This document shows positions 12,615-50,622 of a stretch of 64,000 nucleotides of DNA, one piece after another. The stretch is from positions 372,001-436,000 of the IMG/VR virus record IMGVR_UViG_3300028558_000016; one strand, written 5' to 3'. The notes beneath the pieces were generated by a model, which saw only the letters and a program-made list of their open reading frames with translations, ran no database searches and had not been told where the DNA came from. Numbering within the stretch: the first letter of the stretch is position 1; every line of letters starts with the position of its first letter. A program made the position numbers and the translations under genes.

Positions 12615-13283
12615 TTGAAGCATATTTCTCCATACTATCCGTTCGACGAGAACACATACAAGGATTTTTTTGAAAAAGAATATACCTGTCAGCTTGGAGC
12701 GGTCACGTTCGACGAGGCTAAAGTTATTTTCAATGGATTCAGATTGGTTCCAAAGAAGCTAATAAAGAAATTAATAAACATCATAGAGTTTGATCCGTCT
12801 CTTGGATCATCAAAAAAGTTTTATCCTAACCATGGAAGGTGGGAAGACAACTTCAGCACCATGTTTCTAAATAGAAGCGTTATAGACCTTGAACCAATGG
12901 AATCTGTTCATTTAATAATACATGAAATTGGTCATGCATTGGATCATAGACTTGGCGACATAACTAAAACACCAGATTGGTTGAACTTAAGCGGTTGGAC
13001 GTTAGACCCTCCAGGAATTAGTCAGGTTCAAAAAACAGATAAGAATTTCATTCATGGTGGAGAATATAGCAGATTGAAAATACAAGAAAAAGGAATGTAT
13101 TCTGTTTCAGATTGGTGGTACAAGGAAAATGCAAACTTCGTCAGATGGTATGCAAAAAGAAACCCACAGGAAGACTTTTGTGAGTCGTTCGCATATCTTG
13201 TAATGGAAGAAATTAACAGATTCAAAGGTTGTGAGGACAAGGCAAAGTTCATCAAGGACAATGTTTTGGTATACGGAAATTAA
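12615..13283 (+). CDS. zinc metallopeptidase-like protein
   Basis: HEIGH zincin motif and YAKRNPQEDFCES. Confidence 0.7.
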   Translation: MKHISPYYPFDENTYKDFFEKEYTCQLGAVTFDEAKVIFNGFRLVPKKLIKKLINIIEFDPSLGSSKKFYPNHGRWEDNFSTMFLNRSVIDLEPMESVHLIIHEIGHALDHRLGDITKTPDWLNLSGWTLDPPGISQVQKTDKNFIHGGEYSRLKIQEKGMYSVSDWWYKENANFVRWYAKRNPQEDFCESFAYLVMEEINRFKGCEDKAKFIKDNVLVYGN

Positions 13284-14186: not shown

Positions 14187-14276
14187 ATGAGATTTAATAA
14201 TAATAATCAGCAACAGTATCAACAGAATAATTATTCTGGTTGCGTGTTATTATTTTCTCCTGTCTCTGTTGATTGA
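14187..14276 (+). CDS. attenuator leader peptide, Asn/Gln/Tyr-rich (29 aa)
   Basis: MRFNNNNQQQYQQNNYSGCVLLFSPVSVD*. Confidence 0.85.
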   Translation: MRFNNNNQQQYQQNNYSGCVLLFSPVSVD

Positions 14277-14337
14277 CAGTTAAGATTTTAAGAGAATAAC
14301 ACGCAACCCGAACCGAAACGTTCGGGTTTTTTATTTT
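14238..14337 (+). terminator. attenuator: antiterminator and intrinsic terminator
   Basis: GGTTGCGTGTTATT(14238-51)/AATAACACGCAACC(14295-308), 14 bp, overlaps terminator AACCCGAAC-CGAAAC-GTTCGGGTT-TTTT. Confidence 0.85.
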
Positions 14338-20155: not shown

Positions 20156-20248
20156 ATGAAAAAAGTAAATAACATAATCCCGCAGTTTCAGTTTGTGGTG
20201 CCGTTTAGCGGTTCCAACGGGCGTGTTATGTACTTTGACGATTTGTAA
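20156..20248 (+). CDS. attenuator leader peptide, Pro/Phe/Val-rich (30 aa)
   Basis: MKKVNNIIPQFQFVVPFSGSNGRVMYFDDL*. Confidence 0.8.
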   Translation: MKKVNNIIPQFQFVVPFSGSNGRVMYFDDL

Positions 20249-20298
20249 AAGAAAACGTTAGACAACAGAAAGCCCGGTGGAAACATCGGGCTTTTTTT
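20218..20298 (+). terminator. attenuator: antiterminator and intrinsic terminator
   Basis: CGGGC(20218-22) can pair GCCCG in the 5' arm of AAAGCCCGGTG-GAAA-CATCGGGCTTT-TTTT. Confidence 0.8.
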
Positions 20299-22864: not shown

Positions 22865-23404
22865 ATGAAAGCAGTTTATATTGGCGAATACGTCAAAGAA
22901 AAAATGTTCGATAGGTTATTGAACGAAGTGGCCTGGGCCAATAAGGAAGCTCCAAGAGACGAATGCTTTATGGCATTGGAATCTTTGGAATATACTTATG
23001 GAAAAGGATTCACAAGAACGTACACTTCTTTAGAAATGCACGTTGAAGTGTTGGGCATCATGAAAAAGATGAACGACGAAATGGGAACCGAGTATAACGT
23101 TTGCTTCTTGAATTATTACAAGAGCGAAAAAGAACACTTAGGTTGGCATGCAGATGATTCTCCTGAAATGGATGAGACACACCCAATAGGTGTTGTATCA
23201 TTTGGAGCTGAGAGATACATTTGGACGAAAAATAAGGACTACAGGGGAAACATTCCTGATGAAGATAAGTATTTATTAGGGGATGGTTCTTTGTTTATCA
23301 TGCCTGCAGGTTTCCAAAAGGATAACTTGCACAAGATACCAAAGAATGACAAACCTTGTGGAGGAAGAATTAGTTTAACATTTAGAAAATTCATAAACAA
23401 ATGA
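22865..23404 (+). CDS. AlkB-family 2OG-Fe(II) dioxygenase
   Basis: NYY...GWHADD...H.IPK...RISLTFR. Confidence 0.9.
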   Translation: MKAVYIGEYVKEKMFDRLLNEVAWANKEAPRDECFMALESLEYTYGKGFTRTYTSLEMHVEVLGIMKKMNDEMGTEYNVCFLNYYKSEKEHLGWHADDSPEMDETHPIGVVSFGAERYIWTKNKDYRGNIPDEDKYLLGDGSLFIMPAGFQKDNLHKIPKNDKPCGGRISLTFRKFINK

Positions 23405-24045
23405 GAAGATTTAAAATAAAACAAACAGAAGACCAGCGGGTCTATTACACGTCGGACACCCATTATGCGCACGCGAATATGTGTCGCGGAGTTTCGCAAT
23501 GGGGCGACCTGGATAACAGCACGAGGAACTTCAAAACTCTAATAGAGATGAACAACGAACTTGTGAATGCGATCAATAGAACCGTTAGGCCCAAAGACAT
23601 ACTCTTCCATTGTGGAGACTGGTCGTTTGGAAACGTGAGCAACGTTGCGGAGTTCAGGAGAAGAATACATTGCGAGAATGTGCACATCATATACGGAAAC
23701 CATGATGATCACATAGAAGACGATGAGACCCTACATGGGCATTTCTCTTCTGTACAACATTACAAGGAATTGGCAATCGATGGAGATATGCTTTGCTTGT
23801 TTCACTACAAGCAGACTATATGGAATAAAAGTCATCGTGATGCTTATCACTTGTATGGTCACTCGCACGCAGGTGCTGAACACATGGTTAACGGAAGATC
23901 CATGGATGTTGGAGTTGACAACGCTTACAAGTTGCTTGGAGAATACAGACCTTTTTCTCACGAGGAAGTTTTGTACTTCTTGAAAGGAAGAAAACAGAAA
24001 GCCATAGATCACCATGGCGCTAAAGGTACTGAGTCACACAAATGA
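23401..24045 (+). CDS. calcineurin-like metallophosphoesterase
   Basis: SDTH, GD, GNHD, GHSH. Confidence 0.9.
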   Translation: MRRFKIKQTEDQRVYYTSDTHYAHANMCRGVSQWGDLDNSTRNFKTLIEMNNELVNAINRTVRPKDILFHCGDWSFGNVSNVAEFRRRIHCENVHIIYGNHDDHIEDDETLHGHFSSVQHYKELAIDGDMLCLFHYKQTIWNKSHRDAYHLYGHSHAGAEHMVNGRSMDVGVDNAYKLLGEYRPFSHEEVLYFLKGRKQKAIDHHGAKGTESHK

Positions 24046-24665
24046 AACAGTATCCGTCCATATCCCATTATGATGATTCGATGATCGGAACACCGATGCT
24101 CGCATTCAACAAGATTGACGGAAGCAATCTGCGGTTTGAGTGGAGCAAGAAGAAGGGATGGAATAAATTCGGAACAAGAAGAACCATACTAAATGAAAAA
24201 GATCCACTCTACATCGGAGTGGATCTTTTCTTATATAAATATGCTAACAAGCTTGAGGAGATATTCAAGGACGATAAAGATTTCAGAGGAATAAGAGAAG
24301 TTGTTGTATTCTGTGAGTTCTTTGGGCCAAACAGCTTTTATGGACAGCATGATTTCATTGACATGGATGTCGTCTTGTTGGACGTCAATCCAATGACAAA
24401 GGGATTCATAAATCCAAGAGAGTTCGTAAAGAAGTTTGGAAAGCTTGGAATTCCTGAAATAGTTTTTGACGGAATATTAACGGCTGAGATGGTTGATGAG
24501 ATCAGAAATTCTGATTTAAAAGAAGGTGTGGTGTGCAAGTGGAACAACAACAGACATCTGCATACGGCAAAGATCAAAACTTATAAATGGCTCAATGAAT
24601 TAAAAGCAAGATATGGGCAGGAAGCATTGGACGAAGAATTTGGAAACATTAAATTAATATCATGA
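24042..24665 (+). CDS. RNA ligase-like nucleotidyltransferase
   Basis: KIDGSN motif I, EFFG, EGVV, KIK. Confidence 0.75.
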   Translation: MKQYPSISHYDDSMIGTPMLAFNKIDGSNLRFEWSKKKGWNKFGTRRTILNEKDPLYIGVDLFLYKYANKLEEIFKDDKDFRGIREVVVFCEFFGPNSFYGQHDFIDMDVVLLDVNPMTKGFINPREFVKKFGKLGIPEIVFDGILTAEMVDEIRNSDLKEGVVCKWNNNRHLHTAKIKTYKWLNELKARYGQEALDEEFGNIKLIS

Positions 24666-41766: not shown

Positions 41767-41850
41767 ATGAAGAACAGGAATCACATACACAAGCATCAGA
41801 TATGGCATAGAGATATGTCGGGCTTGGGTGTTACCTGTACTTTGAAGTAA
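41767..41850 (+). CDS. attenuator leader peptide, His/Trp (27 aa)
   Basis: MKNRNHIHKHQIWHRDMSGLGVTCTLK*. Confidence 0.85.
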   Translation: MKNRNHIHKHQIWHRDMSGLGVTCTLK

Positions 41851-41906
41851 GTATTGGTTATTTACGAAAGTAAAACCTCAAGGCCTAAAACCTTGAGGTT
41901 TTTTTT
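41823..41906 (+). terminator. attenuator: antiterminator and intrinsic terminator
   Basis: CTTGGGTGTT can pair AACCTCAAG; terminator AAAACCTCAAGG-CCTAAAA-CCTTGAGGTTTT-TTTT. Confidence 0.82.
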
Positions 41907-44590: not shown

Positions 44591-44830
44591 ATGCAAAAGA
44601 TTAAGGACGCTTTAAAATGGATGGTTTGTACCAAGCTTGGATGGTTGATAATATCATTCTTATGGATTGGTGTGTTCATGATAATAAACGATAACATAGA
44701 ATCTGGATGGGCCTTTTGGGTTGCAATTCCAGGATTCGCATACATCATAGGTTTATTCCTTGTCATGATGTTTTATGCGGTAAAGAATACGATAGGAGAC
44801 ATAAAAGAAAATAGAAATGAAAAATCTTAA
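44591..44830 (+). CDS. small membrane protein
   Basis: two TM segments. Confidence 0.6.
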   Translation: MQKIKDALKWMVCTKLGWLIISFLWIGVFMIINDNIESGWAFWVAIPGFAYIIGLFLVMMFYAVKNTIGDIKENRNEKS

Positions 44831-45113
44831 AAAGTTCGGTGAGTTAAACGAGGGTGGATTAGGTTATGAAAACAACAAAACGCTTCCTCCATCTGGGACA
44901 CACATAAAATATGTTGCTGACACAACAGATCCAAAGACCAAAAAAATTCTCAAGATTATTTGGAATTCATGGGACGAGGCAAAAAGGAAACAGATGCTTA
45001 ACAAAATGGGACACAGCGAAAAGTATTTTGATGCTTCTTTTGAAGACCTGACAGGAGAGATCCAAGGAAAGATCGTAATGCTTGATGCCTCATTGCCAGA
45101 AAACAAGCGATAA
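44817..45113 (+). CDS. hypothetical protein with capsid-targeting-like N-terminus
   Basis: MKNLKKFGELNEG. Confidence 0.6.
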   Translation: MKNLKKFGELNEGGLGYENNKTLPPSGTHIKYVADTTDPKTKKILKIIWNSWDEAKRKQMLNKMGHSEKYFDASFEDLTGEIQGKIVMLDASLPENKR

Positions 45114-45115
45114 AA

Positions 45116-45190
45116 TAAATTTTTTAGTTTCAAATATAATACCTATATTTGTAAAAGATTAAGAAACAAAGAAAACCGCAAGGTATATAA
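45116..45190 (+). promoter_or_regulatory. conserved operon promoter block
   Basis: TTTTTTAGTTTCAAATATAATACCTATATTTG...GAAACAAA...GGTATATAAG. Confidence 0.65.
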
Positions 45191-45197
45191 GATACAA

Positions 45198-45281
45198 ATG
45201 ATGAATACAGTAAATATTACCCGAATTATTAGGATTAGACGCAGATCAGCGACTCGCCTGGGTAGTATTATTTTATCATGA
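45198..45281 (+). CDS. attenuator leader peptide, Ile/Arg-rich (27 aa)
   Basis: MMNTVNITRIIRIRRRSATRLGSIILS*. Confidence 0.85.
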   Translation: MMNTVNITRIIRIRRRSATRLGSIILS

Positions 45282-45345
45282 AAGTTTTAAGGATTTAGAA
45301 AACTATGAATGGAATAAGCCCAGGACGAAAGTTCTGGGCTTTTTT
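45257..45345 (+). terminator. attenuator: antiterminator and intrinsic terminator
   Basis: CCTGGGT(45257-63) can pair GCCCAGG(45318-24) of AAGCCCAGGAC-GAAA-GTTCTGGGCTT-TTTT. Confidence 0.85.
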
Positions 45346-45395
45346 CATTTTAAAAATATCGAAAATGAAATGGTTTAAGAAATTACAGGAAATAA

Positions 45396-45479
45396 CGGCA
45401 CGTACTCAGACCATCCTGATAAGATGGATAACTTGTAGCGGTGTTGCAAACGTGGGTTCAAATCCCTCCGTGCCGACCA
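45396..45479 (+). ncRNA. D-arm-less rearranged tRNA-like RNA, anticodon GAT (Ile)
   Basis: CGGCACG/CGTGCCG+ACCA; CCATC-CTGATAA-GATGG 8 nt after the acceptor strand. Confidence 0.65.
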
Positions 45480-45760
45480 TGAAAAATATGTTGTATAAAA
45501 CCGCAAGAAGGTCGTTGTCAAAAAAGACAAACAGACATTTGAGACAAACCACGTTTCTCTACGAGATGTGTGGAAATGATTTTCAAAAGCTGTTAAAGGT
45601 GGAAGAGAGATTGAAAAATTATTTTCTCTTTTATTGTCCAGGCGATCCTGAAGAAGTGGAAAAAGTTTTGGCATTGCCTGAAAAATTTTTATTGAACGAT
45701 AAGAAGTGGCAAGATGGATCAAAATATTTTTGCTTAGAAGAATTTTACGACGGAATGTAG
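45479..45760 (+). CDS. hypothetical protein
   Basis: MKNMLYKT...; stop TAG lies inside the next tRNA. Confidence 0.55.
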   Translation: MKNMLYKTARRSLSKKTNRHLRQTTFLYEMCGNDFQKLLKVEERLKNYFLFYCPGDPEEVEKVLALPEKFLLNDKKWQDGSKYFCLEEFYDGM

Positions 45761-45824
45761 CTCAGTTGGTTAGAGCACCCGCCTGATACGCGGTAGGTCG
45801 GCAGTTCGAATCTGCCCATTCCGA
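45751..45824 (+). tRNA. tRNA-Ile(GAT)
   Basis: CCGC-CTGATAC-GCGG; CGGAATG/CATTCCG. Confidence 0.9.
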
Positions 45825-45827
45825 CAG

Positions 45828-45973
45828 ATGTCCTTAGCTCAGTGGTTAGAGTATTATGCTGATAAAAGGTTTTAGATCTTGTAATGGAAAAATATCACGG
45901 CTCATAACCGTGGTACCAAAACAAAAATTTAAAATGCACATAAGGGTCGGTGGTTCGAATCCATCAGGACATG
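45828..45973 (+). tRNA. tRNA (GAT) with about 73-nt insert carrying a nested CAT anticodon arm
   Basis: ATGTCCT/AGGACAT; TTATG-CTGATA[insert with CACGG-CTCATAA-CCGTG]A-CATAA. Confidence 0.65.
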
Positions 45974-45982
45974 CATAAAAAT

Positions 45983-46056
45983 GCCCGCGTAGCTCAACTG
46001 GATAGAGCACCTGACTACGGATCAGGAGGTTTAGAGTTCGAATCTCTACGTGGGTA
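45983..46056 (+). tRNA. tRNA-Arg(ACG)
   Basis: CCTGA-CTACGGA-TCAGG. Confidence 0.92.
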
Positions 46057-46060
46057 CATT

Positions 46061-46134
46061 GGTTTTGTAGCTCAATTGGATAGAGCAATTCCGTCCTAAG
46101 GAAAAGGTTATAGGTTCGAGTCCTATCAAGATCA
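46061..46134 (+). tRNA. tRNA-Arg(CCT)
   Basis: TTCC-GTCCTAA-GGAA. Confidence 0.85.
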
Positions 46135-46139
46135 CAAAT

Positions 46140-46212
46140 GCCTGCGTAGCTCAGTGGACAGAGCGCCGGTCTTCGGAACCGGGCGTCGGGAGTTCGAATC
46201 TCTCCGTGGGTA
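46140..46212 (+). tRNA. tRNA-Arg(TCG)
   Basis: CCGGT-CTTCGGA-ACCGG. Confidence 0.9.
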
Positions 46213-46236
46213 CTGAAGTAAAATGGAATTAAATAT

Positions 46237-46326
46237 GCCCGTGTAGCCGAGGAAGTTTTCTAAACTTTTATCCGTAATTGGAGCTGCGTCTCACGACTAA
46301 TGGGGGTTCGAATCCCTCCACGGGTA
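46237..46326 (+). ncRNA. D-arm-less rearranged tRNA-like RNA, anticodon TCT (Arg)
   Basis: GCCCGTG/CACGGGT; GAAGT-TTTCTAA-ACTTT right after the acceptor strand. Confidence 0.62.
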
Positions 46327-46341
46327 CTTAAAATTAAAGTT

Positions 46342-47505
46342 ATGAAAATTGATATTGATAAAATAAAACAGATCCCCAAAGAGATTTCGGAAGAATTTGG
46401 GATGTGCGTCTATGGACCAATCTCAGATGAGATTAAGGCATGGATGGAATTCCATGGTATGCAATCGCAAAACATGGGAAATTATACAAACATCTATACA
46501 GATAAAAACATTATTGATCTGTTCAATAAACCAGAACCATTTGAATACATCGATGGGTTCAGTCCAAACCTAAACAAGAATCTTCACATTGGACACTTCT
46601 CAAATTTAGTTCTTGCAAAGGCTTTCGTCTCTCTTGGAATAGCAAAGAAGACTGTGGCAATATTGGGAGACACGTTAGAAGGGGATGTTTCAAAGGAAGA
46701 TGCGTTGAACAACTACAATGAGATATGTGAGAAATTCTCATACCCCGTAGATAAGATGTTCATGGCTTCTGAAATGGAATCTGATTACAACCTCGTGGAT
46801 GGTGTTCATGAATATGAAGGAACCAAAGTGTTCTATCTTGATACGCCATTAGTTGGAATCAAAAGCGATGGGTCAACAACATATTTCTATCAGGACGTTG
46901 CATTGGCACAAAAATTAAATGCTCCAACATTATATCTTACAGGAAGCGAACAGAACGGACATTTCAACAGCTTAAAGGAAATGTTTCCTAAAATAAAGCA
47001 CATTGGACTTGGACTTGTAAAAGCAAAAGGAGGAAAGATGTCAAGCAGACTCGGAAATGTTATTTGGATGCAAGATGTCATCGATGAAATGATGAGCAAC
47101 TTTCAAGACGAAAAAGTGTGCTATAATGTTTTTGCAGGATTTATTTTGAAATCAACTCCTAAGTCTGAAAAGAACATAGACATATATCAATTGGACAATC
47201 CATTGAATTCACCTGGATTGTACTTAAGCTATACGTTAGCAAAACTAAAAAGCGCTGGAGTGAAATGTGAAGGAAAAACATTCACCTCTCAAGATCTTCA
47301 ATTCAAATACATGAAGGCCTTGAACTCTCTTTCTCCAAATATTTTGCTTGAAGGTTTAATTGATCATGCAAAGAAGATAAGCGGTTTATACATCACTCAC
47401 AAGATAAAAGATAATGCGGTGAACCAGTCCATGTTTGAAATATTGGGTTCAGATTTATTATTAGGAATGAGCCTCCTGGGTTTATTTGATGTTGACAAGG
47501 TTTAA
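46342..47505 (+). CDS. argS: compact arginyl-tRNA synthetase
   Basis: FSPNLNKNLHIGH, KSDGSTTYFYQDVA, EQNGHF, KMSSRLGN, YLSYTLAK. Confidence 0.9.
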   Translation: MKIDIDKIKQIPKEISEEFGMCVYGPISDEIKAWMEFHGMQSQNMGNYTNIYTDKNIIDLFNKPEPFEYIDGFSPNLNKNLHIGHFSNLVLAKAFVSLGIAKKTVAILGDTLEGDVSKEDALNNYNEICEKFSYPVDKMFMASEMESDYNLVDGVHEYEGTKVFYLDTPLVGIKSDGSTTYFYQDVALAQKLNAPTLYLTGSEQNGHFNSLKEMFPKIKHIGLGLVKAKGGKMSSRLGNVIWMQDVIDEMMSNFQDEKVCYNVFAGFILKSTPKSEKNIDIYQLDNPLNSPGLYLSYTLAKLKSAGVKCEGKTFTSQDLQFKYMKALNSLSPNILLEGLIDHAKKISGLYITHKIKDNAVNQSMFEILGSDLLLGMSLLGLFDVDKV

Positions 47506-47562
47506 TTAATTTTTCGTAAATTAGTCTTGCGCATCTATTTATAAACTGATAATCTAAATCAA

Positions 47563-48519
47563 ATGGCAACCAAAACATCTAAAGCCGCAACAGGAACCGT
47601 GAAAGCACGAACAGCAGGAAGAAAAGCAACGACATCAACAAAGACACCAATGAAAGCAGAAACTACATTGGAACCAAAAAAGGCCTCGAAGATTAAAATA
47701 AGTGGAAAAGAAGTTACATTGAACGGGTATTTTAAAATTGAATTGGGAACCTTTTCGATTTTAAAGCACAACATCCGAAACAACATAAGCACTCTTTTAA
47801 TAGGTCCAACAGGACTTGGAAAAACAGATGTCGCAGTTAACATTGCGTCTGTGCTCGATGTTCCTATAACCATATTTGATATGGGAACGATGACTGACCC
47901 CATCATGGGACTTGTTGGAACTCACGTCATAGAGGTTAAAGATGGAAAAACATATTCTGAATTCAAGAAAAGCAGATTCTCTGACGTCATCCAAAAACCA
48001 GGAATAGTTTTATTGGATGAGGTCAATCGTGCTGCATCAGCCGCTAACAACTTATTATTTCCTTGTTTAGATTTCAGAAGAGAGCTTCCAATGGAATATT
48101 CGTTTGGAGATACTAAGCCAATTCCAATTCATCCTAAATGTGTTTTCTTTGCAACGGCAAATATAGGATCTCAGTATACCGGAACTCACAAGCTTGACAG
48201 AGCATTAATCGATAGGTTCATGATTATTGCAGTTGATAGTCTCAACACTCAACAAATTATGTCCACGTTAGAAGTGACTCATTCTAAATTAAGTGAGACT
48301 GACAGAAAAAAGATTGTTGACATTTACAACAAGATAAACAAAGAGCATGACGATTTCAAAATAGGTTTCAATTTGTCAATACGACATTTGAAAACTGTTG
48401 CGACACTTGTGCAAAACAAGTTCACGATATATGATGCGTATTATGCAATATGCAAAGGACTTGGTGGACCAGAAGGATTAAAAGCTATTGAATCGATCTT
48501 AAGCACCTCTAAAAAATGA
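47563..48519 (+). CDS. MoxR/CbbQ-like AAA+ ATPase
   Basis: GPTGLGKT, LLDEVNR, ATAN, LDRALIDRF. Confidence 0.9.
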   Translation: MATKTSKAATGTVKARTAGRKATTSTKTPMKAETTLEPKKASKIKISGKEVTLNGYFKIELGTFSILKHNIRNNISTLLIGPTGLGKTDVAVNIASVLDVPITIFDMGTMTDPIMGLVGTHVIEVKDGKTYSEFKKSRFSDVIQKPGIVLLDEVNRAASAANNLLFPCLDFRRELPMEYSFGDTKPIPIHPKCVFFATANIGSQYTGTHKLDRALIDRFMIIAVDSLNTQQIMSTLEVTHSKLSETDRKKIVDIYNKINKEHDDFKIGFNLSIRHLKTVATLVQNKFTIYDAYYAICKGLGGPEGLKAIESILSTSKK

Positions 48520-50255
48520 TAGGATTTGATATTACAGGAAAGAAATCAAAAAGCGTAACTAAATGGGAAGACTCATTGTTTGGAGGCTATTACAGAACTG
48601 TAATGGATTACCCGGACGTGAAAGTTCACAGCAACGTTGATTTTGATTTTGGAACCATAGCGTATGGAAGTTACTTTTTAAAAGAGAAGATCTTGAAGAT
48701 TTTCTTATCTAAGGTTAAAACACACGGTTACACTACAAAGCTTTTGGATAACTGTACTGTCGAAAGAAAACGAGATGCATGGGGTGATGAAATCACTGAG
48801 GCCACCGTAGATAATAACAGCAAGCTCAGTACAATAAGAGCTGTGATTGCAAGAGAACCAGAGTTTGCTCCTATGTTTTCCCATTATATGAAGTTTATAA
48901 TGGACACCAGAATTTACTTTTACAAAAGCAATTCTAAAGCTCCAAGCAATGGGACTGGTTCTTCAGACGACGATTTTGAAGAATTTAAGGATGAAAACGA
49001 AAATGACGAATCATCCGGAAAATCAGAAGAAGAAAAATCTAAAAACGGAAACTCCGGTAAAGGCAAAGAGAAAGAGAAAGAAGAAGAGAAACCAGAAGAA
49101 ACCAAGGATGAAAGCTCTGGTGATGGAGAAGGAGAAGAAAAAGAGGAGCCAGAAAATTCCGAATCTGATGGTTCAAATTCTGAAGAAGAAAAGGAAGAAG
49201 AAAAAGGAGATGGAGAAGGAGAAGGAGAAGAAAAATCTCCAGAGGATAAGGCGTTGGAAGATAAATTAGAAAAAGAACTTGAGAAAAGGAAACAGGAAAT
49301 AGAAGAACGAGAACAGAAGGCAAAACAAAAACCTGTCAAAAAATTAACTCAGGCTGAAATAAATCAAATCCAAGAATCTTTCAAAAAGGCCATTCAAAGT
49401 ATAGTTGAAGAGTCCATTGTTCATAGCTACATTTCAGGATTTAAAAAACCTGTTAAAGTAATTTTTGAACGACCAAATGTTAGAGACACTGAGTTTAATT
49501 ACGAAGACAAAAGAATAGCCGAGAATCTCGTTAAGATGCTCGACATTTCATTTGACCCAGCGAAAGAAATAGTAAAGAACTTGCGTCTTGGCAAATTGGA
49601 CATATCAAAGATTGCAGAGGTTCCAGCCGGAAATATTGCCATATACAAGCAGGATGTGGAAAATCAAACGACTAAACCATTTAGCATTGTAATATTATGT
49701 GATGAGTCAGGAAGCATGGGTTCTGGACATGAATACAAAGGACGTGGCGATAAATTGTATTCGCAATATAGAATAGTCAAACAATTGTACTTGGCATTTT
49801 CTGACATCATTCCACAGAATAAACTCTATGTGTATGGACATTCGGGATCAGAAGAACCTGAGCTTTATGTTTATCAAGATTCTTATCGTCCAAATTTTAC
49901 CAAGACGATTGATCACATGATCCACAACCATAATCACCATTCCAATTATGATGGACCTGCAATAGAAGAAGTTTACAATCAGGTAAGAAATTCCACCGAT
50001 GATAGAATAATTTTTATTTGTCTTTCTGATGGTCAACCTGCTGGAAATAATTATGGAGGTCACGATGATCAATTGAAAATGAAACAAATAATTGAAAAAT
50101 GTAAGAGGGATGAATTCGTGACTGTTGGTGTTGGAATTCAATATTTCACCGTAAAGAATCTTTATCAATACAGCACGGTGGTAACTGATCTGGATGAAAT
50201 GGCTAAGAAAGTGAGTCACATAGTCAATCACGTGGTCAAAAGTGAGTTTCAATAA
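48516..50255 (+). CDS. VWA-domain partner protein with acidic linker
   Basis: DESGSM MIDAS, LSDGQP; E/K/G-rich linker. Confidence 0.85.
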   Translation: MIGFDITGKKSKSVTKWEDSLFGGYYRTVMDYPDVKVHSNVDFDFGTIAYGSYFLKEKILKIFLSKVKTHGYTTKLLDNCTVERKRDAWGDEITEATVDNNSKLSTIRAVIAREPEFAPMFSHYMKFIMDTRIYFYKSNSKAPSNGTGSSDDDFEEFKDENENDESSGKSEEEKSKNGNSGKGKEKEKEEEKPEETKDESSGDGEGEEKEEPENSESDGSNSEEEKEEEKGDGEGEGEEKSPEDKALEDKLEKELEKRKQEIEEREQKAKQKPVKKLTQAEINQIQESFKKAIQSIVEESIVHSYISGFKKPVKVIFERPNVRDTEFNYEDKRIAENLVKMLDISFDPAKEIVKNLRLGKLDISKIAEVPAGNIAIYKQDVENQTTKPFSIVILCDESGSMGSGHEYKGRGDKLYSQYRIVKQLYLAFSDIIPQNKLYVYGHSGSEEPELYVYQDSYRPNFTKTIDHMIHNHNHHSNYDGPAIEEVYNQVRNSTDDRIIFICLSDGQPAGNNYGGHDDQLKMKQIIEKCKRDEFVTVGVGIQYFTVKNLYQYSTVVTDLDEMAKKVSHIVNHVVKSEFQ

Positions 50256-50272: not shown

Positions 50273-50545
50273 ATGTTCTTTGACACGATACAAAATATTC
50301 TTCTCGCAAAGAGAAAGAGAAAAGAGTATGGATATACAGCAGTAGGAGAATTGCTTAGAAATGTTCATGGAACTGAAGCAAAAATAATAGATGTTATTTT
50401 TAATCCGGCTGGATCCATTATAAAATTTGCTTACGATGATGACATGTTCTATTATACAACAATAGAGAAGCTCCAGACAAAATATTTTAAGATGATTGAA
50501 TATTCTTCTGGTAGAATGTCAAATGAAGAATATGGAAATGAATAG
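50273..50545 (+). CDS. hypothetical protein
   Basis: ORF track. Confidence 0.55.
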   Translation: MFFDTIQNILLAKRKRKEYGYTAVGELLRNVHGTEAKIIDVIFNPAGSIIKFAYDDDMFYYTTIEKLQTKYFKMIEYSSGRMSNEEYGNE

Positions 50546-50618
50546 GTCCCGTAGCTCAGCTGGATAGAGCACAGGTTTTCTAAACCTGCGGTCCTTGGTT
50601 CGAATCCAAGCGGGATCA
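50545..50618 (+). tRNA. tRNA-Arg(TCT)
   Basis: CAGGT-TTTCTAA-ACCTG; GGTCCCG/CGGGATC. Confidence 0.92.
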
Positions 50619-50622
50619 CAAA

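What the first reader, a model, noticed from the sequence alone, without database searches (positions are those of the whole stretch)
45198..45345. Attenuator 4: Ile/Arg leader samples every Arg isoacceptor the phage encodes
ITRIIRIRRR uses CGA, AGG, AGA and CGC. These correspond to tRNA-Arg UCG, CCU, UCU and ACG found downstream (46140, 46061, 46237/50545, 45983), while ATT matches tRNA-Ile(GAU); ArgRS follows. This diversity of Arg codons in an AT-rich genome suggests sensing of individual isoacceptors rather than the amino acid alone. That favours a tRNA-damage sensor (inference).
Basis: partly seen in the sequence, partly recalled or inferred. Interest (0 to 1): 0.9.

Follow-up and report, generated by a model that had tools for sequence, protein, structure and literature searches.

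The report
Phage attenuator gating tRNA-Arg/Ile and ArgRS operon
A huge phage places a trp-operon-style leader peptide and terminator switch in front of its own tRNA-Ile, tRNA-Arg and arginyl-tRNA synthetase genes, so it probably makes more of them only when ribosomes slow down at Ile or Arg codons.

Summary
ORF 45198-45281 has an Ile/Arg run using ATT and CGA, AGG, AGA, CGC. A strong intrinsic terminator follows (45316-45345). Next come tRNA-Ile(GAU) x2, tRNA-Arg ACG/CCU/UCG, a tRNA-like UCU element and a compact ArgRS.

Folding gives three mutually exclusive hairpins (1:2, 2:3, 3:4). The antiterminator can form only while a ribosome sits at or before the last Arg codon.

This is one of four such switches in the window. 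An automated rule found 19 in related huge phages. In these, 182 of 286 regulatory codons match downstream tRNAs against 52 expected.

It is therefore a classical ribosome-mediated attenuator, here controlling tRNA and synthetase genes. I found no published description.

The isoacceptor claim is only partly supported:
- The Arg codon mixture alone has P about 0.05-0.09.
- It is conserved in a diverged homolog (L179) and shifts with the tRNA set in another (L178, CGG with tRNA-CCG).
- Outside this one leader lineage, and for other amino acids, coverage is not significant.
- Some of the codons also pair inside the 1:2 hairpin.

The "tRNA-damage sensor" reading is untested. A supply homeostat explains the data equally well.

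The parts
45144..45151 (+). TAnnTTTG motif (TATATTTG), candidate Bacteroidota-type -7 promoter element upstream of the leader
   Evidence: Read. The same motif lies within 130 nt upstream of 10 of 19 leaders, against a background of 0.53 per kb. Its promoter function is inferred.
45183..45189 (+). GTATATA motif 8 nt before the leader ATG. Candidate phage promoter or initiation signal; the leader mRNA may be nearly leaderless.
   Evidence: TATATA lies within 130 nt upstream of 12 of 20 leaders, against 0.12 expected per site. It also sits 4-8 nt before other gene starts in the window. There is no Shine-Dalgarno sequence. Function is inferred.
45198..45281 (+). Leader peptide ORF (27 codons; N-terminal half M-M-N-T-V-N-I-T-R-I-I-R-I-R-R-R)
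   Evidence: All 18 leading codons are identical in L047, although only 70% of conserved ArgRS residues keep the same codon. The peptide pattern M.NT...RIIR.RR is kept in L178 and L179.
45216..45245 (+). Regulatory codon run: ATT ACC CGA ATT ATT AGG ATT AGA CGC AGA
   Evidence: Ribosome-mask folding shows the antiterminator forms for every A-site position up to codon 16 (AGA at 45243) and is lost 1-3 codons later.
45198..45280 (+). Hairpin 1:2 (start-codon region and Arg codons paired with 45249-45280). Default anti-antiterminator and probable pause hairpin.
   Evidence: dG -20.4, z -2.8, with 2 of 200 shuffles as stable. AGG pairs with CCU 45257-59 and CGC pairs with GCG 45249-51.
45254..45328 (+). 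Antiterminator 2:3. Region 2 (CUCGCCUGGGU plus an AU-rich tail, inside the ORF) pairs with the terminator's 5' arm.
   Evidence: dG -24.4, z -4.5, with 0 of 200 shuffles as stable. Compensatory changes are seen: window CCUGGG:CCCAGG, L178 GUCCGGG:CCCGGAC, L179 GUCUUGGA:UCCAAGAC.
45307..45350 (+). Intrinsic terminator 3:4 (core stem 45316-45341, U-tract 45340-45345)
   Evidence: dG -26.2, z -7.3. It is one of only six '+' strand terminators found in 64 kb, and four of them sit just upstream of tRNA clusters.
45396..45476 (+). tRNA-like gene with a GAU (Ile) anticodon loop, no D arm and a long variable region. First gene after the terminator.
   Evidence: Rfam tRNA 37.4 bits; not recovered in the narrower. 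It is conserved after the homologous attenuators in L047, L178 and L179, with 8 of 17 pairs showing double changes.
45479..45760 (+). 93-aa ORF of unknown function
   Evidence: no Pfam hit. A gene is called at the same place in L047.
45751..45825 (+). tRNA-Ile(GAU)
45828..45974 (+). tRNA-Ile(GAU) with a 73-nt intron after position 37
   Evidence: ARAGORN with introns allowed; Rfam 48.7 bits.
45983..46057 (+). tRNA-Arg(ACG)
46061..46135 (+). tRNA-Arg(CCU)
46140..46213 (+). tRNA-Arg(UCG)
46237..46326 (+). Divergent tRNA-like gene with a UCU anticodon loop, vestigial D arm and 30-nt variable insert
   Evidence: Rfam 34.7 bits, with alignment shown. It aligns poorly with canonical tRNA-Arg(UCU).
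46342..47505 (+). Compact (387 aa) arginyl-tRNA synthetase-like gene
   Evidence: Pfam PF00750, E = 3.6e-8. A PDB profile search hits only ArgRS. 728 homologs with E <= 0.001, several of the best 120 on 100-727 kb contigs.
50545..50619 (+). Canonical tRNA-Arg(UCU). No '+' terminator was found between it and the attenuator.
14187..14326 (+). Sister attenuator A1. The Asn/Gln/Tyr leader plus terminator precede tRNA-Asn x3, Gln x3, Tyr, then TyrRS, a GlnRS-like gene and a GatB/YqeY-like gene.
20156..20291 (+). Sister attenuator A2. The Pro/Phe/Val leader plus terminator precede tRNA-Pro x2, Phe x2, Val x2, then a ProRS-like gene.
41767..41898 (+). Sister attenuator A3. The His/Trp leader plus terminator precede tRNA-Trp, His x2, then a HisRS-like gene and TrpRS.

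Best explanation
This is a classical ribosome-mediated transcription attenuator that gates a phage operon of translation-supply genes.

Proposed mechanism:
1. Transcription starts in the 84-nt spacer upstream (inferred).
2. A ribosome translates the 27-codon leader while RNA polymerase proceeds.
3. If Ile-tRNA(GAU) and every Arg-tRNA needed for CGA, AGG, AGA and CGC are plentiful, the ribosome runs on towards the stop codon. It then covers region 2 (45254-45280). The terminator 45307-45350 forms and transcription ends at the U-tract.
4. If any of those charged tRNAs is scarce, the ribosome stalls within codons 7-16. Region 2 stays free and pairs with the terminator's 5' arm (antiterminator 45254-45328).
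5. The polymerase then reads through into tRNA-Ile, four tRNA-Arg species and ArgRS. These restore decoding capacity and shut the switch again (negative feedback).
6. With no translation at all, hairpin 1:2 sequesters region 2 and termination is the default.

Because the products are tRNAs and a synthetase, not biosynthetic enzymes, the loop regulates decoding capacity for particular codons rather than amino-acid supply. The mixed Arg codons probably let shortage of any one isoacceptor open the switch.

Shown here: the anatomy, the alternative structures, the codon/tRNA correspondence and conservation. Inferred: leader translation, transcription-translation coupling, the promoter and the regulatory outcome.
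For: Anatomy:
- The leader ORF, terminator and downstream genes are as described.
- The three hairpins are mutually exclusive and each more stable than shuffles: z -2.8, -4.5 and -7.3. The whole leader has z -5.5.
- With a ribosome mask (A-site plus 12 nt) on the nascent transcript, the antiterminator forms for stalls up to codon 16, the last Arg of the run, and not beyond.

Generality:
- Only six '+' terminators were found in 64 kb. Four lie directly before tRNA clusters, each preceded by a short ORF naming the downstream tRNAs and synthetases: N/Q/Y, P/F/V, H/W and I/R.
- In A2 and A3 the first tRNA starts 17-21 nt after the terminator stem (within about 10-15 nt of the T-tract), leaving no room for a separate promoter.
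- An automated rule on 103 non-redundant related loci (1.2 Mb) found 21 terminator-then-tRNA sites. Twenty have an upstream ORF. Nineteen show both the antiterminator boundary and a cognate leader. The one without cognate codons also lacks an antiterminator.
- Cognate codons number 182 of 286 against 52.5 expected (z = 21). Permuting the leader/operon pairing gives P < 5e-5.

Conservation:
- The leader is nucleotide-identical in L047 through codon 18, while only 70% of conserved ArgRS residues keep their codon.
- L178 and L179 keep the peptide pattern and the same stall boundary. They show compensatory changes between region 2 and the terminator arm.

Codon level:
- L179 keeps CGA-ATT-ATT-AGG and AGA-CGY-AGA although synonymous sites in ArgRS are saturated (0.48 identical against 0.43 random).
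- L178 switches to CGG where the phage has tRNA-Arg(CCG) instead of UCG.
- Arg isoacceptor coverage is 20/22 against 15.3 expected, P = 0.006.
- Leader codons are readable by the operon's own tRNAs in 51 of 66 informative cases against about 40 expected (P 0.0005-0.006 under strict wobble).
Against: - There are no expression data. Leader translation, the promoter and coupling are inferred.
- There is no Shine-Dalgarno sequence.
- In the full-length thermodynamic fold the terminator wins in most masked states, so the model depends on co-transcriptional kinetics.
- The codon-level signal is fragile. The A4 mixture alone has P 0.05-0.09.
- The Arg test loses significance without the three homologous leaders, P = 0.40.
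- Readability falls to P 0.09-0.19 if U34 reads A, G and U in four-codon boxes. Isoacceptor coverage over all amino acids has P 0.09-0.6.
- AGG and CGC pair within hairpin 1:2, and L047 extends that stem. Structure could therefore drive the codon choice.
- One or two codons per isoacceptor give low sensitivity in the standard attenuation model (PMC1183508).
- The host is unknown.
Confidence: 0.8

Rival explanations
1. Same attenuator, but it senses Ile and Arg only at the amino-acid or bulk-tRNA level. On this view the mixture of Arg codons has no sensing role. It reflects chance plus the need for G/C-rich triplets to build hairpin 1:2 in an AT-rich genome.
For: - The mixture alone has P 0.05-0.09.
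- AGG:CCU and CGC:GCG pair in hairpin 1:2, and L047 lengthens that stem.
- There is no excess of distinct synonymous codons, and no significant isoacceptor coverage, across 14-19 modules.
- The Arg signal vanishes outside one leader lineage.
Against: - CGA-ATT-ATT lies in a predicted loop in both the window and L179, yet is codon-identical despite saturated synonymous sites.
- Leader codon sets track the tRNA repertoire: CGG with CCG in L178, AGA-only with UCU-only in L002, and CGT plus AGA with ACG plus UCU in L134.
- Amino-acid-sensing leaders classically use one biased codon, not a mixture (PMC1183508).
Confidence: 0.4
2. One reading: the leader is a dedicated sensor of tRNA damage, for example cleavage of particular isoacceptors by host anticodon nucleases. 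It would switch on replacement tRNAs when a host defence attacks the pool.
For: - Per-isoacceptor codon sampling, as far as it holds.
- Phage tRNAs are known to rescue infection from tRNA-cleaving defences (PMC10264068, PMC11464382).
- RNA-repair-like genes (AlkB-like oxygenase, metallophosphoesterase, RNA ligase) lie downstream of sister operon A2, with no '+' terminator between.
- Conserved aberrant tRNA-like genes with the same anticodons sit in the operon.
Against: - A stalled ribosome cannot tell cleaved tRNA from absent, uncharged or simply scarce tRNA.
- The same design would serve codon-usage mismatch with the host, or decay of host tRNA late in infection.
- The leaders cover nearly all amino acids for which the phages carry tRNAs, not a nuclease-typical subset.
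- No defence or host data are available.
Confidence: 0.2
3. An RNA-only switch (T-box-like or another tRNA- or ligand-binding leader), with the short ORF untranslated.
For: The products (tRNAs and a synthetase) are what T-boxes control in Firmicutes. There is no Shine-Dalgarno sequence before the ORF.
Against: - No T-box or other riboswitch was hit, even at E <= 1. The only weak hit is Thr_leader, itself a peptide-leader family.
- The reading frame and the cognate residues are conserved while the nucleotides change.
- The stall boundary coincides with the end of the cognate codons in 19 modules.
- One leader names up to seven or more amino acids, which a single specifier cannot do.
Confidence: 0.04
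4. An ordinary terminator ending the upstream gene (44817-45113), with a chance ORF in the spacer.
For: The terminator lies 205 nt after the upstream stop codon.
Against: - Ile/Arg enrichment has P = 1.3e-5.
- Four such sites occur in the window and 19 in relatives, with z = 21.
- The antiterminator has z -4.5.
- The tRNAs immediately downstream have no room for their own promoter in A2 and A3.
Confidence: 0.02

Closest known systems
Leader-peptide attenuators of aminoacyl-tRNA synthetase genes (E. coli pheST with leader pheM; predicted or RNA-seq-supported ones before Streptomyces trpS, leuS, alaS, thrS; PMC1262725, PMC8079986)
   Same: A short ORF rich in the cognate codon, with alternative antiterminator and terminator hairpins and a synthetase as the regulated product. 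The output responds to charged tRNA. Some Streptomyces leaders are transcribed leaderless, as may be the case here.
   Different: Here the first regulated products are tRNA genes, followed by the synthetase. One leader reports two amino acids, and up to seven or more in relatives. The Arg codons are mixed rather than uniform. The element is viral and repeated modularly, four times in 64 kb.
Amino-acid biosynthetic attenuators (trp, his, leu, thr, pheA, and the multivalent ilvGMEDA leader; from textbook knowledge and PMC1183508, PMC3082878)
   Same: The 1:2 / 2:3 / 3:4 architecture and the placement of regulatory codons relative to region 2. The ilv leader is a precedent for several amino acids in one leader.
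   Different: The products do not make amino acids. Classical leaders favour a single, selectively sensitive synonymous codon, whereas this one uses four Arg codons. There is no sequence-family membership (Thr_leader 25 bits against a 55-bit cut-off).
T-box riboswitches
   Same: The same regulatory logic: shortage of charged tRNA switches on synthetase genes through antitermination.
   Different: A T-box binds uncharged tRNA directly and needs no translation. No T-box was detected. Here the sensor is a translating ribosome.
Phage tRNA sets as supplements or counter-defence (PMC10264068, PMC11464382)
   Same: Phage-encoded tRNAs replace or supplement host tRNAs.
   Different: Those studies concern what the tRNAs do. 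Here the new point is a demand-driven switch controlling when they are made.

Membership tests
Classical ribosome-mediated transcription attenuator | A short leader ORF with start and stop codons upstream of the regulated genes | tested here: met
   ORF 45198-45281. The frame is conserved in L047, L178 and L179.
Classical ribosome-mediated transcription attenuator | Regulatory codons cognate to the operon's product, clustered in the leader | tested here: met
   9 of 16 codons are Ile or Arg, P = 1.3e-5. Family-wide the count is 182/286 against 52.5 expected.
Classical ribosome-mediated transcription attenuator | A Rho-independent terminator between the leader and the structural genes | tested here: met
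Classical ribosome-mediated transcription attenuator | An antiterminator that excludes the terminator, and whose 5' strand is masked by a ribosome at the stop codon but free when the ribosome stalls at the regulatory codons | tested here: met
   Compensatory changes are seen in L178 and L179. This is in silico only.
Classical ribosome-mediated transcription attenuator | An upstream 1:2 hairpin (anti-antiterminator or pause site) | tested here: inconclusive
   It is predicted at -20.4 kcal/mol with z -2.8, and 2 of 200 shuffles are as stable. It is also present in L047, L178 and L179 folds. Pausing is not testable here.
Classical ribosome-mediated transcription attenuator | The leader is translated, and read-through rises when the cognate charged tRNA is limiting | not testable with these tools
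   Needs a reporter, Term-seq or an in-vitro coupled system.
Rfam peptide-leader families (Thr_leader and others) | A score at or above the family's gathering threshold | tested here: not met
   The best hit is Thr_leader at 25.1 bits against 55. There was nothing at the gathering threshold.
T-box riboswitch | A specifier loop plus the conserved T-box sequence (Rfam T-box model) | tested here: not met
   No hit at E <= 1 in 45100-45500, nor at the gathering threshold in the whole window.
   Arg coverage is 20/22 against 15.3 expected (P = 0.006), but P = 0.40 without the homologous Ile/Arg leaders. Over all amino acids P is 0.09-0.6.

The most novel reading that the evidence does not exclude
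Huge phages may run a modular 'decoding check-list'. Each tRNA/synthetase operon would be fronted by a leader peptide that spells out, codon by codon, the isoacceptors it supplies. Loss of any single tRNA species, including cleavage by host anticodon nucleases, would then be detected by one stalled ribosome. The response would be replacement tRNAs, aberrant decoy-like tRNAs, cognate synthetases and, in one operon, RNA-repair enzymes.
Probability: 0.2. Interest if true: 0.9.

Novelty: new variant of a known kind. Interest (0 to 1): 0.75.

Why it matters
Why phages carry tRNAs and synthetases, and when they use them, has been debated for decades. The main ideas are codon compensation, host tRNA decay and escape from tRNA-cleaving defences.

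A demand-driven switch in front of these genes would mean the phage measures decoding capacity in real time and tops it up per amino acid, and perhaps per codon. That makes the question directly testable, because the leader states which codons the phage regards as limiting.

It would also extend leader-peptide attenuation in three directions:
- from amino-acid biosynthesis and a few bacterial synthetase genes to tRNA genes themselves;
- to viruses;
- to probable Bacteroidota-type hosts without Shine-Dalgarno sequences.

The short, portable leaders could also serve as natural sensors of the charging of specific tRNAs.

Tried and rejected
- Rfam at gathering threshold on the whole window, and at E <= 1 on 45100-45500, found only tRNAs and a weak Thr_leader-like hit. 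There was no T-box or riboswitch.
- BLASTN of 44800-47600 against GenBank phages gave only tRNA-level hits, plus one 68% match in the ArgRS gene of the 636-kb uncultured phage LR756504.1.
- A single-protein locus search returned only the source contig. The first attempt used the wrong frame.
- Contigs of the 71-75% ArgRS relatives (L048-L051, L177, L180) are cut before the leader. L177 keeps only the identical terminator.
- A MAFFT alignment of the four homologous leaders is unreliable in the 3' half. I did not use it for pair counting and read covariation from the individual folds instead.
- General tests for 'more distinct synonymous codons than expected' and for isoacceptor coverage over all amino acids were negative.
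- Stop-codon recoding was checked because of the suppressor tRNA. There is no clear sign in this window.
- Seven literature searches found no description of attenuators before phage tRNA or synthetase genes. Subscription-only papers were not searchable.
- I recalled a possible leader-like sequence before E. coli tRNA-Phe genes but could not verify it.

Full report
**What is there**

The window is part of a 482-kb viral contig, IMGVR_UViG_3300028558_000016. It has 36% G+C and carries 25-28 tRNA genes.

At the reported place, ORF 45198-45281 encodes 27 residues. Codons 7-16 read ATT ACC CGA ATT ATT AGG ATT AGA CGC AGA. A strong intrinsic terminator follows, with its stem at 45316-45341 and a T-tract after it.

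Downstream, in order, lie:
- a tRNA-like gene with a GAU loop;
- a 93-aa ORF;
- tRNA-Ile(GAU);
- a second tRNA-Ile(GAU) with a 73-nt intron;
- tRNA-Arg ACG, CCU and UCG;
- a divergent tRNA-like gene with a UCU loop;
- a 387-aa ArgRS-like gene.

A canonical tRNA-Arg(UCU) lies at 50545. The one nuance is that 46237-46326 is an aberrant tRNA-like element, not a standard tRNA.

**Structure**

The leader folds far better than shuffles, with z -5.5. Three mutually exclusive hairpins can be drawn:
- 1:2 spans 45198-45280, at -20.4 kcal/mol and z -2.8.
- 2:3 is the antiterminator, 45254-45328, at -24.4 kcal/mol and z -4.5.
- 3:4 is the terminator, 45307-45350, at -26.2 kcal/mol and z -7.3.

I folded the nascent transcript, before the 3' terminator arm exists, with a ribosome masking everything up to 12 nt past its A-site. 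The antiterminator forms for every stall position up to codon 16, the last Arg of the run. It weakens at codon 17 and is gone from codon 18. With the ribosome at the stop codon, or with no ribosome, the terminator forms. This is the geometry of the trp and his attenuators.

**It is not alone**

A simple scan finds only six '+' strand terminators in 64 kb. Four of them lie directly before tRNA clusters. Each of those four is preceded by a short ORF that names what follows:

| Leader content | Downstream genes |
|---|---|
| Asn/Gln/Tyr | tRNA-Asn, Gln, Tyr; TyrRS; GlnRS-like; GatB-like |
| Pro/Phe/Val | tRNA-Pro, Phe, Val; ProRS-like |
| His/Trp | tRNA-Trp, His; HisRS-like; TrpRS |
| Ile/Arg | this finding |

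In two of them the first tRNA begins 17-21 nt after the terminator stem, only about 10-15 nt beyond the T-tract. These tRNAs can therefore only be transcribed through the terminator.

**Relatives**

The ArgRS has 728 homologs with E <= 0.001, several of the best 120 on contigs of 100-727 kb. I collected about 130 loci.

I then applied a fixed rule to 103 non-redundant loci (1.2 Mb). The rule required a terminator, a tRNA within 450 nt, and an ATG ORF of 10-45 codons ending 5-100 nt upstream.
- It returned 21 sites, 20 of them with an ORF.
- Nineteen show an antiterminator whose permissive zone ends at the last cognate codon.
- The single ORF without cognate codons also lacks an antiterminator.
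- In the regulatory zones, 182 of 286 codons encode amino acids of the downstream tRNAs, against 52.5 expected (z = 21).
- Permuting leaders against operons gives P < 5e-5.
- Examples include a Gly/Thr/Glu leader before tRNA-Gly, Thr and Glu, a Pro/Asp/Gln leader before those tRNAs, and a Gln6 leader before five tRNA-Gln.

Many leaders have a TAnnTTTG motif and/or a TATATA motif just upstream, and none has a Shine-Dalgarno sequence. This hints at Bacteroidota-type hosts and perhaps nearly leaderless leader mRNAs. That is inference only.

**Homologs of this particular leader**

- L047 (ArgRS 92% identical) has the same leader with identical codons through codon 18. In the ArgRS gene, by contrast, only 70% of conserved residues keep their codon.
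- L179 (64%) has a leader with the pattern M-K-N-T-I-I-I-R-R-I-I-R-R-R-R. Its Arg codons are AGA CGA AGG AGA CGT AGA, and its tRNA-Arg set is ACG, CCU, UCG, UCU.
- L178 (62%, 49% G+C) has the pattern M-N-T-M-V-N-I-N-R-I-I-R-R-R-R. Its Arg codons are CGG AGA AGG CGC CGA, then CGT, and its tRNA-Arg set is ACG, GCG, UCU, CCU, CCG.
- Both L178 and L179 keep the stall boundary at codon 16.
- Both have different terminator arms matched by compensatory changes in region 2.

**The isoacceptor question**

Taken alone, the window's Arg mixture is only suggestive, at P 0.05-0.09.

In favour of isoacceptor sampling:
- L179 keeps CGA-ATT-ATT-AGG and AGA-CGY-AGA although synonymous sites in the adjacent gene are saturated (0.48 identical against 0.43 random). 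Part of that stretch lies in a predicted loop.
- L178 replaces CGA by CGG where tRNA-Arg(CCG) replaces UCG.
- A leader followed only by tRNA-Arg(UCU) uses AGA three times. One followed by ACG plus UCU uses CGT and AGA.
- A leader followed by tRNA-Ile(UAU) uses ATA, while this one uses ATT with GAU.
- Over eight Arg-containing modules, 20 of 22 isoacceptors are covered against 15.3 expected, P = 0.006.
- Leader codons are readable by the operon's own tRNAs more often than synonymous usage predicts, 51/66 against about 40.

Against it:
- The Arg result rests on the three homologous Ile/Arg leaders. Without them P = 0.40.
- Coverage over all amino acids is not significant, and there is no excess of distinct codons.
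- The readability result fades under a broader wobble rule.
- AGG and CGC pair inside hairpin 1:2.

Classical amino-acid-sensing leaders favour one codon (PMC1183508), so a mixture fits tRNA-level sensing. The case is nevertheless not closed.

**Mechanism and meaning**

The best reading is a negative-feedback homeostat for decoding capacity. Slow decoding of Ile or Arg codons opens the switch, and the operon's tRNAs and ArgRS close it again.

Nothing in the sequence tells whether the usual trigger is a codon-usage mismatch with the host, decay of host tRNAs during infection, or cleavage by defence nucleases. The last idea has contextual support only. Phage tRNAs are known to counter such defences (PMC10264068, PMC11464382). 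RNA-repair-like genes lie downstream of sister operon A2. Conserved aberrant tRNA-like genes also sit in the operon.

**Known or new**

Leader-peptide attenuators before synthetase genes are known or predicted in bacteria: pheST, and Streptomyces trpS, leuS, alaS and thrS (PMC1262725, PMC8079986). Seven full-text searches found no report of such switches before tRNA gene clusters or in phages.

I therefore rate this a new variant of a known kind. All functional steps remain to be shown experimentally.

Noticed in passing
window 45396-45476; L047 ~2455-2537; L178 ~5388-5470; L179 ~522-600: A conserved tRNA-like gene is the first gene after the Ile/Arg attenuator. It has a 7-bp acceptor stem, an anticodon stem with an invariant CUGAUAA loop (GAU), a T arm, no D arm and a roughly 25-nt variable region. 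Eight of 17 pairs show compensatory changes across four phages. ARAGORN does not call it. Rfam called it in one run (37 bits) and not in a narrower one.
   Followed up: partly
window 46237-46326: A second D-arm-poor tRNA-like gene with a UCU anticodon loop and a 30-nt variable insert. The close relative L047 has a normal tRNA-Arg(UCU) at that position.
   Followed up: partly
window 45828-45974: tRNA-Ile(GAU) interrupted by a 73-nt intron after position 37. It lies next to an intron-less copy.
   Followed up: partly
window 22865-24665: An AlkB-like 2OG-Fe(II) oxygenase, a metallophosphoesterase and an RNA ligase lie in a row, forming an RNA (tRNA?) repair-like set. They are downstream of the Pro/Phe/Val attenuator operon, with no '+' strand terminator in between.
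   Followed up: partly
window 2278-2351 (also tRNA-like stretches near 2001-2140 and 2190-2275): An amber-suppressor-type tRNA (anticodon CUA). However, TAG ends only 4 of 69 long ORFs, and reading TAG as sense adds little coding length, so there is no clear recoding in this window. Neighbouring stretches look like further aberrant or intron-bearing tRNAs.
   Followed up: partly
window 813, 9199, 13282, 44041, 45183 (4-8 nt before ATG starts); 14072, 20061, 41624 (90-145 nt before leaders A1-A3): A recurrent [AG][AT]TATATA[ACG] motif at gene and leader starts, with no Shine-Dalgarno sequences. It may be a phage promoter giving short or absent 5' UTRs, or an initiation signal.
   Followed up: partly
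window 12615-13283: A 222-aa ORF with only a sub-threshold Pfam match (23.1 bits against a 27.4-bit cut-off) to a zinc-metallopeptidase-type family named after a listed toxin, plus a weak metallopeptidase hit. This is most likely a generic metallopeptidase-like fold. I did not pursue it.
   Followed up: no
window 47563-50255: A MoxR-like AAA+ ATPase and a VWA-domain protein with a long acidic Glu/Lys/Ser-rich linker follow ArgRS. The same pair follows ArgRS in several relatives (L048, L049, L180).
   Followed up: no
L037 4822-4869, L039 4866-4907, L097 2672-2719, L107 4853-4915, L110 436-483: In other relatives a short Asn/Arg leader plus terminator sits directly before ArgRS, with no tRNA in between. 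L107 has four consecutive Arg codons, AGA CGT AGG AGA.
   Followed up: partly
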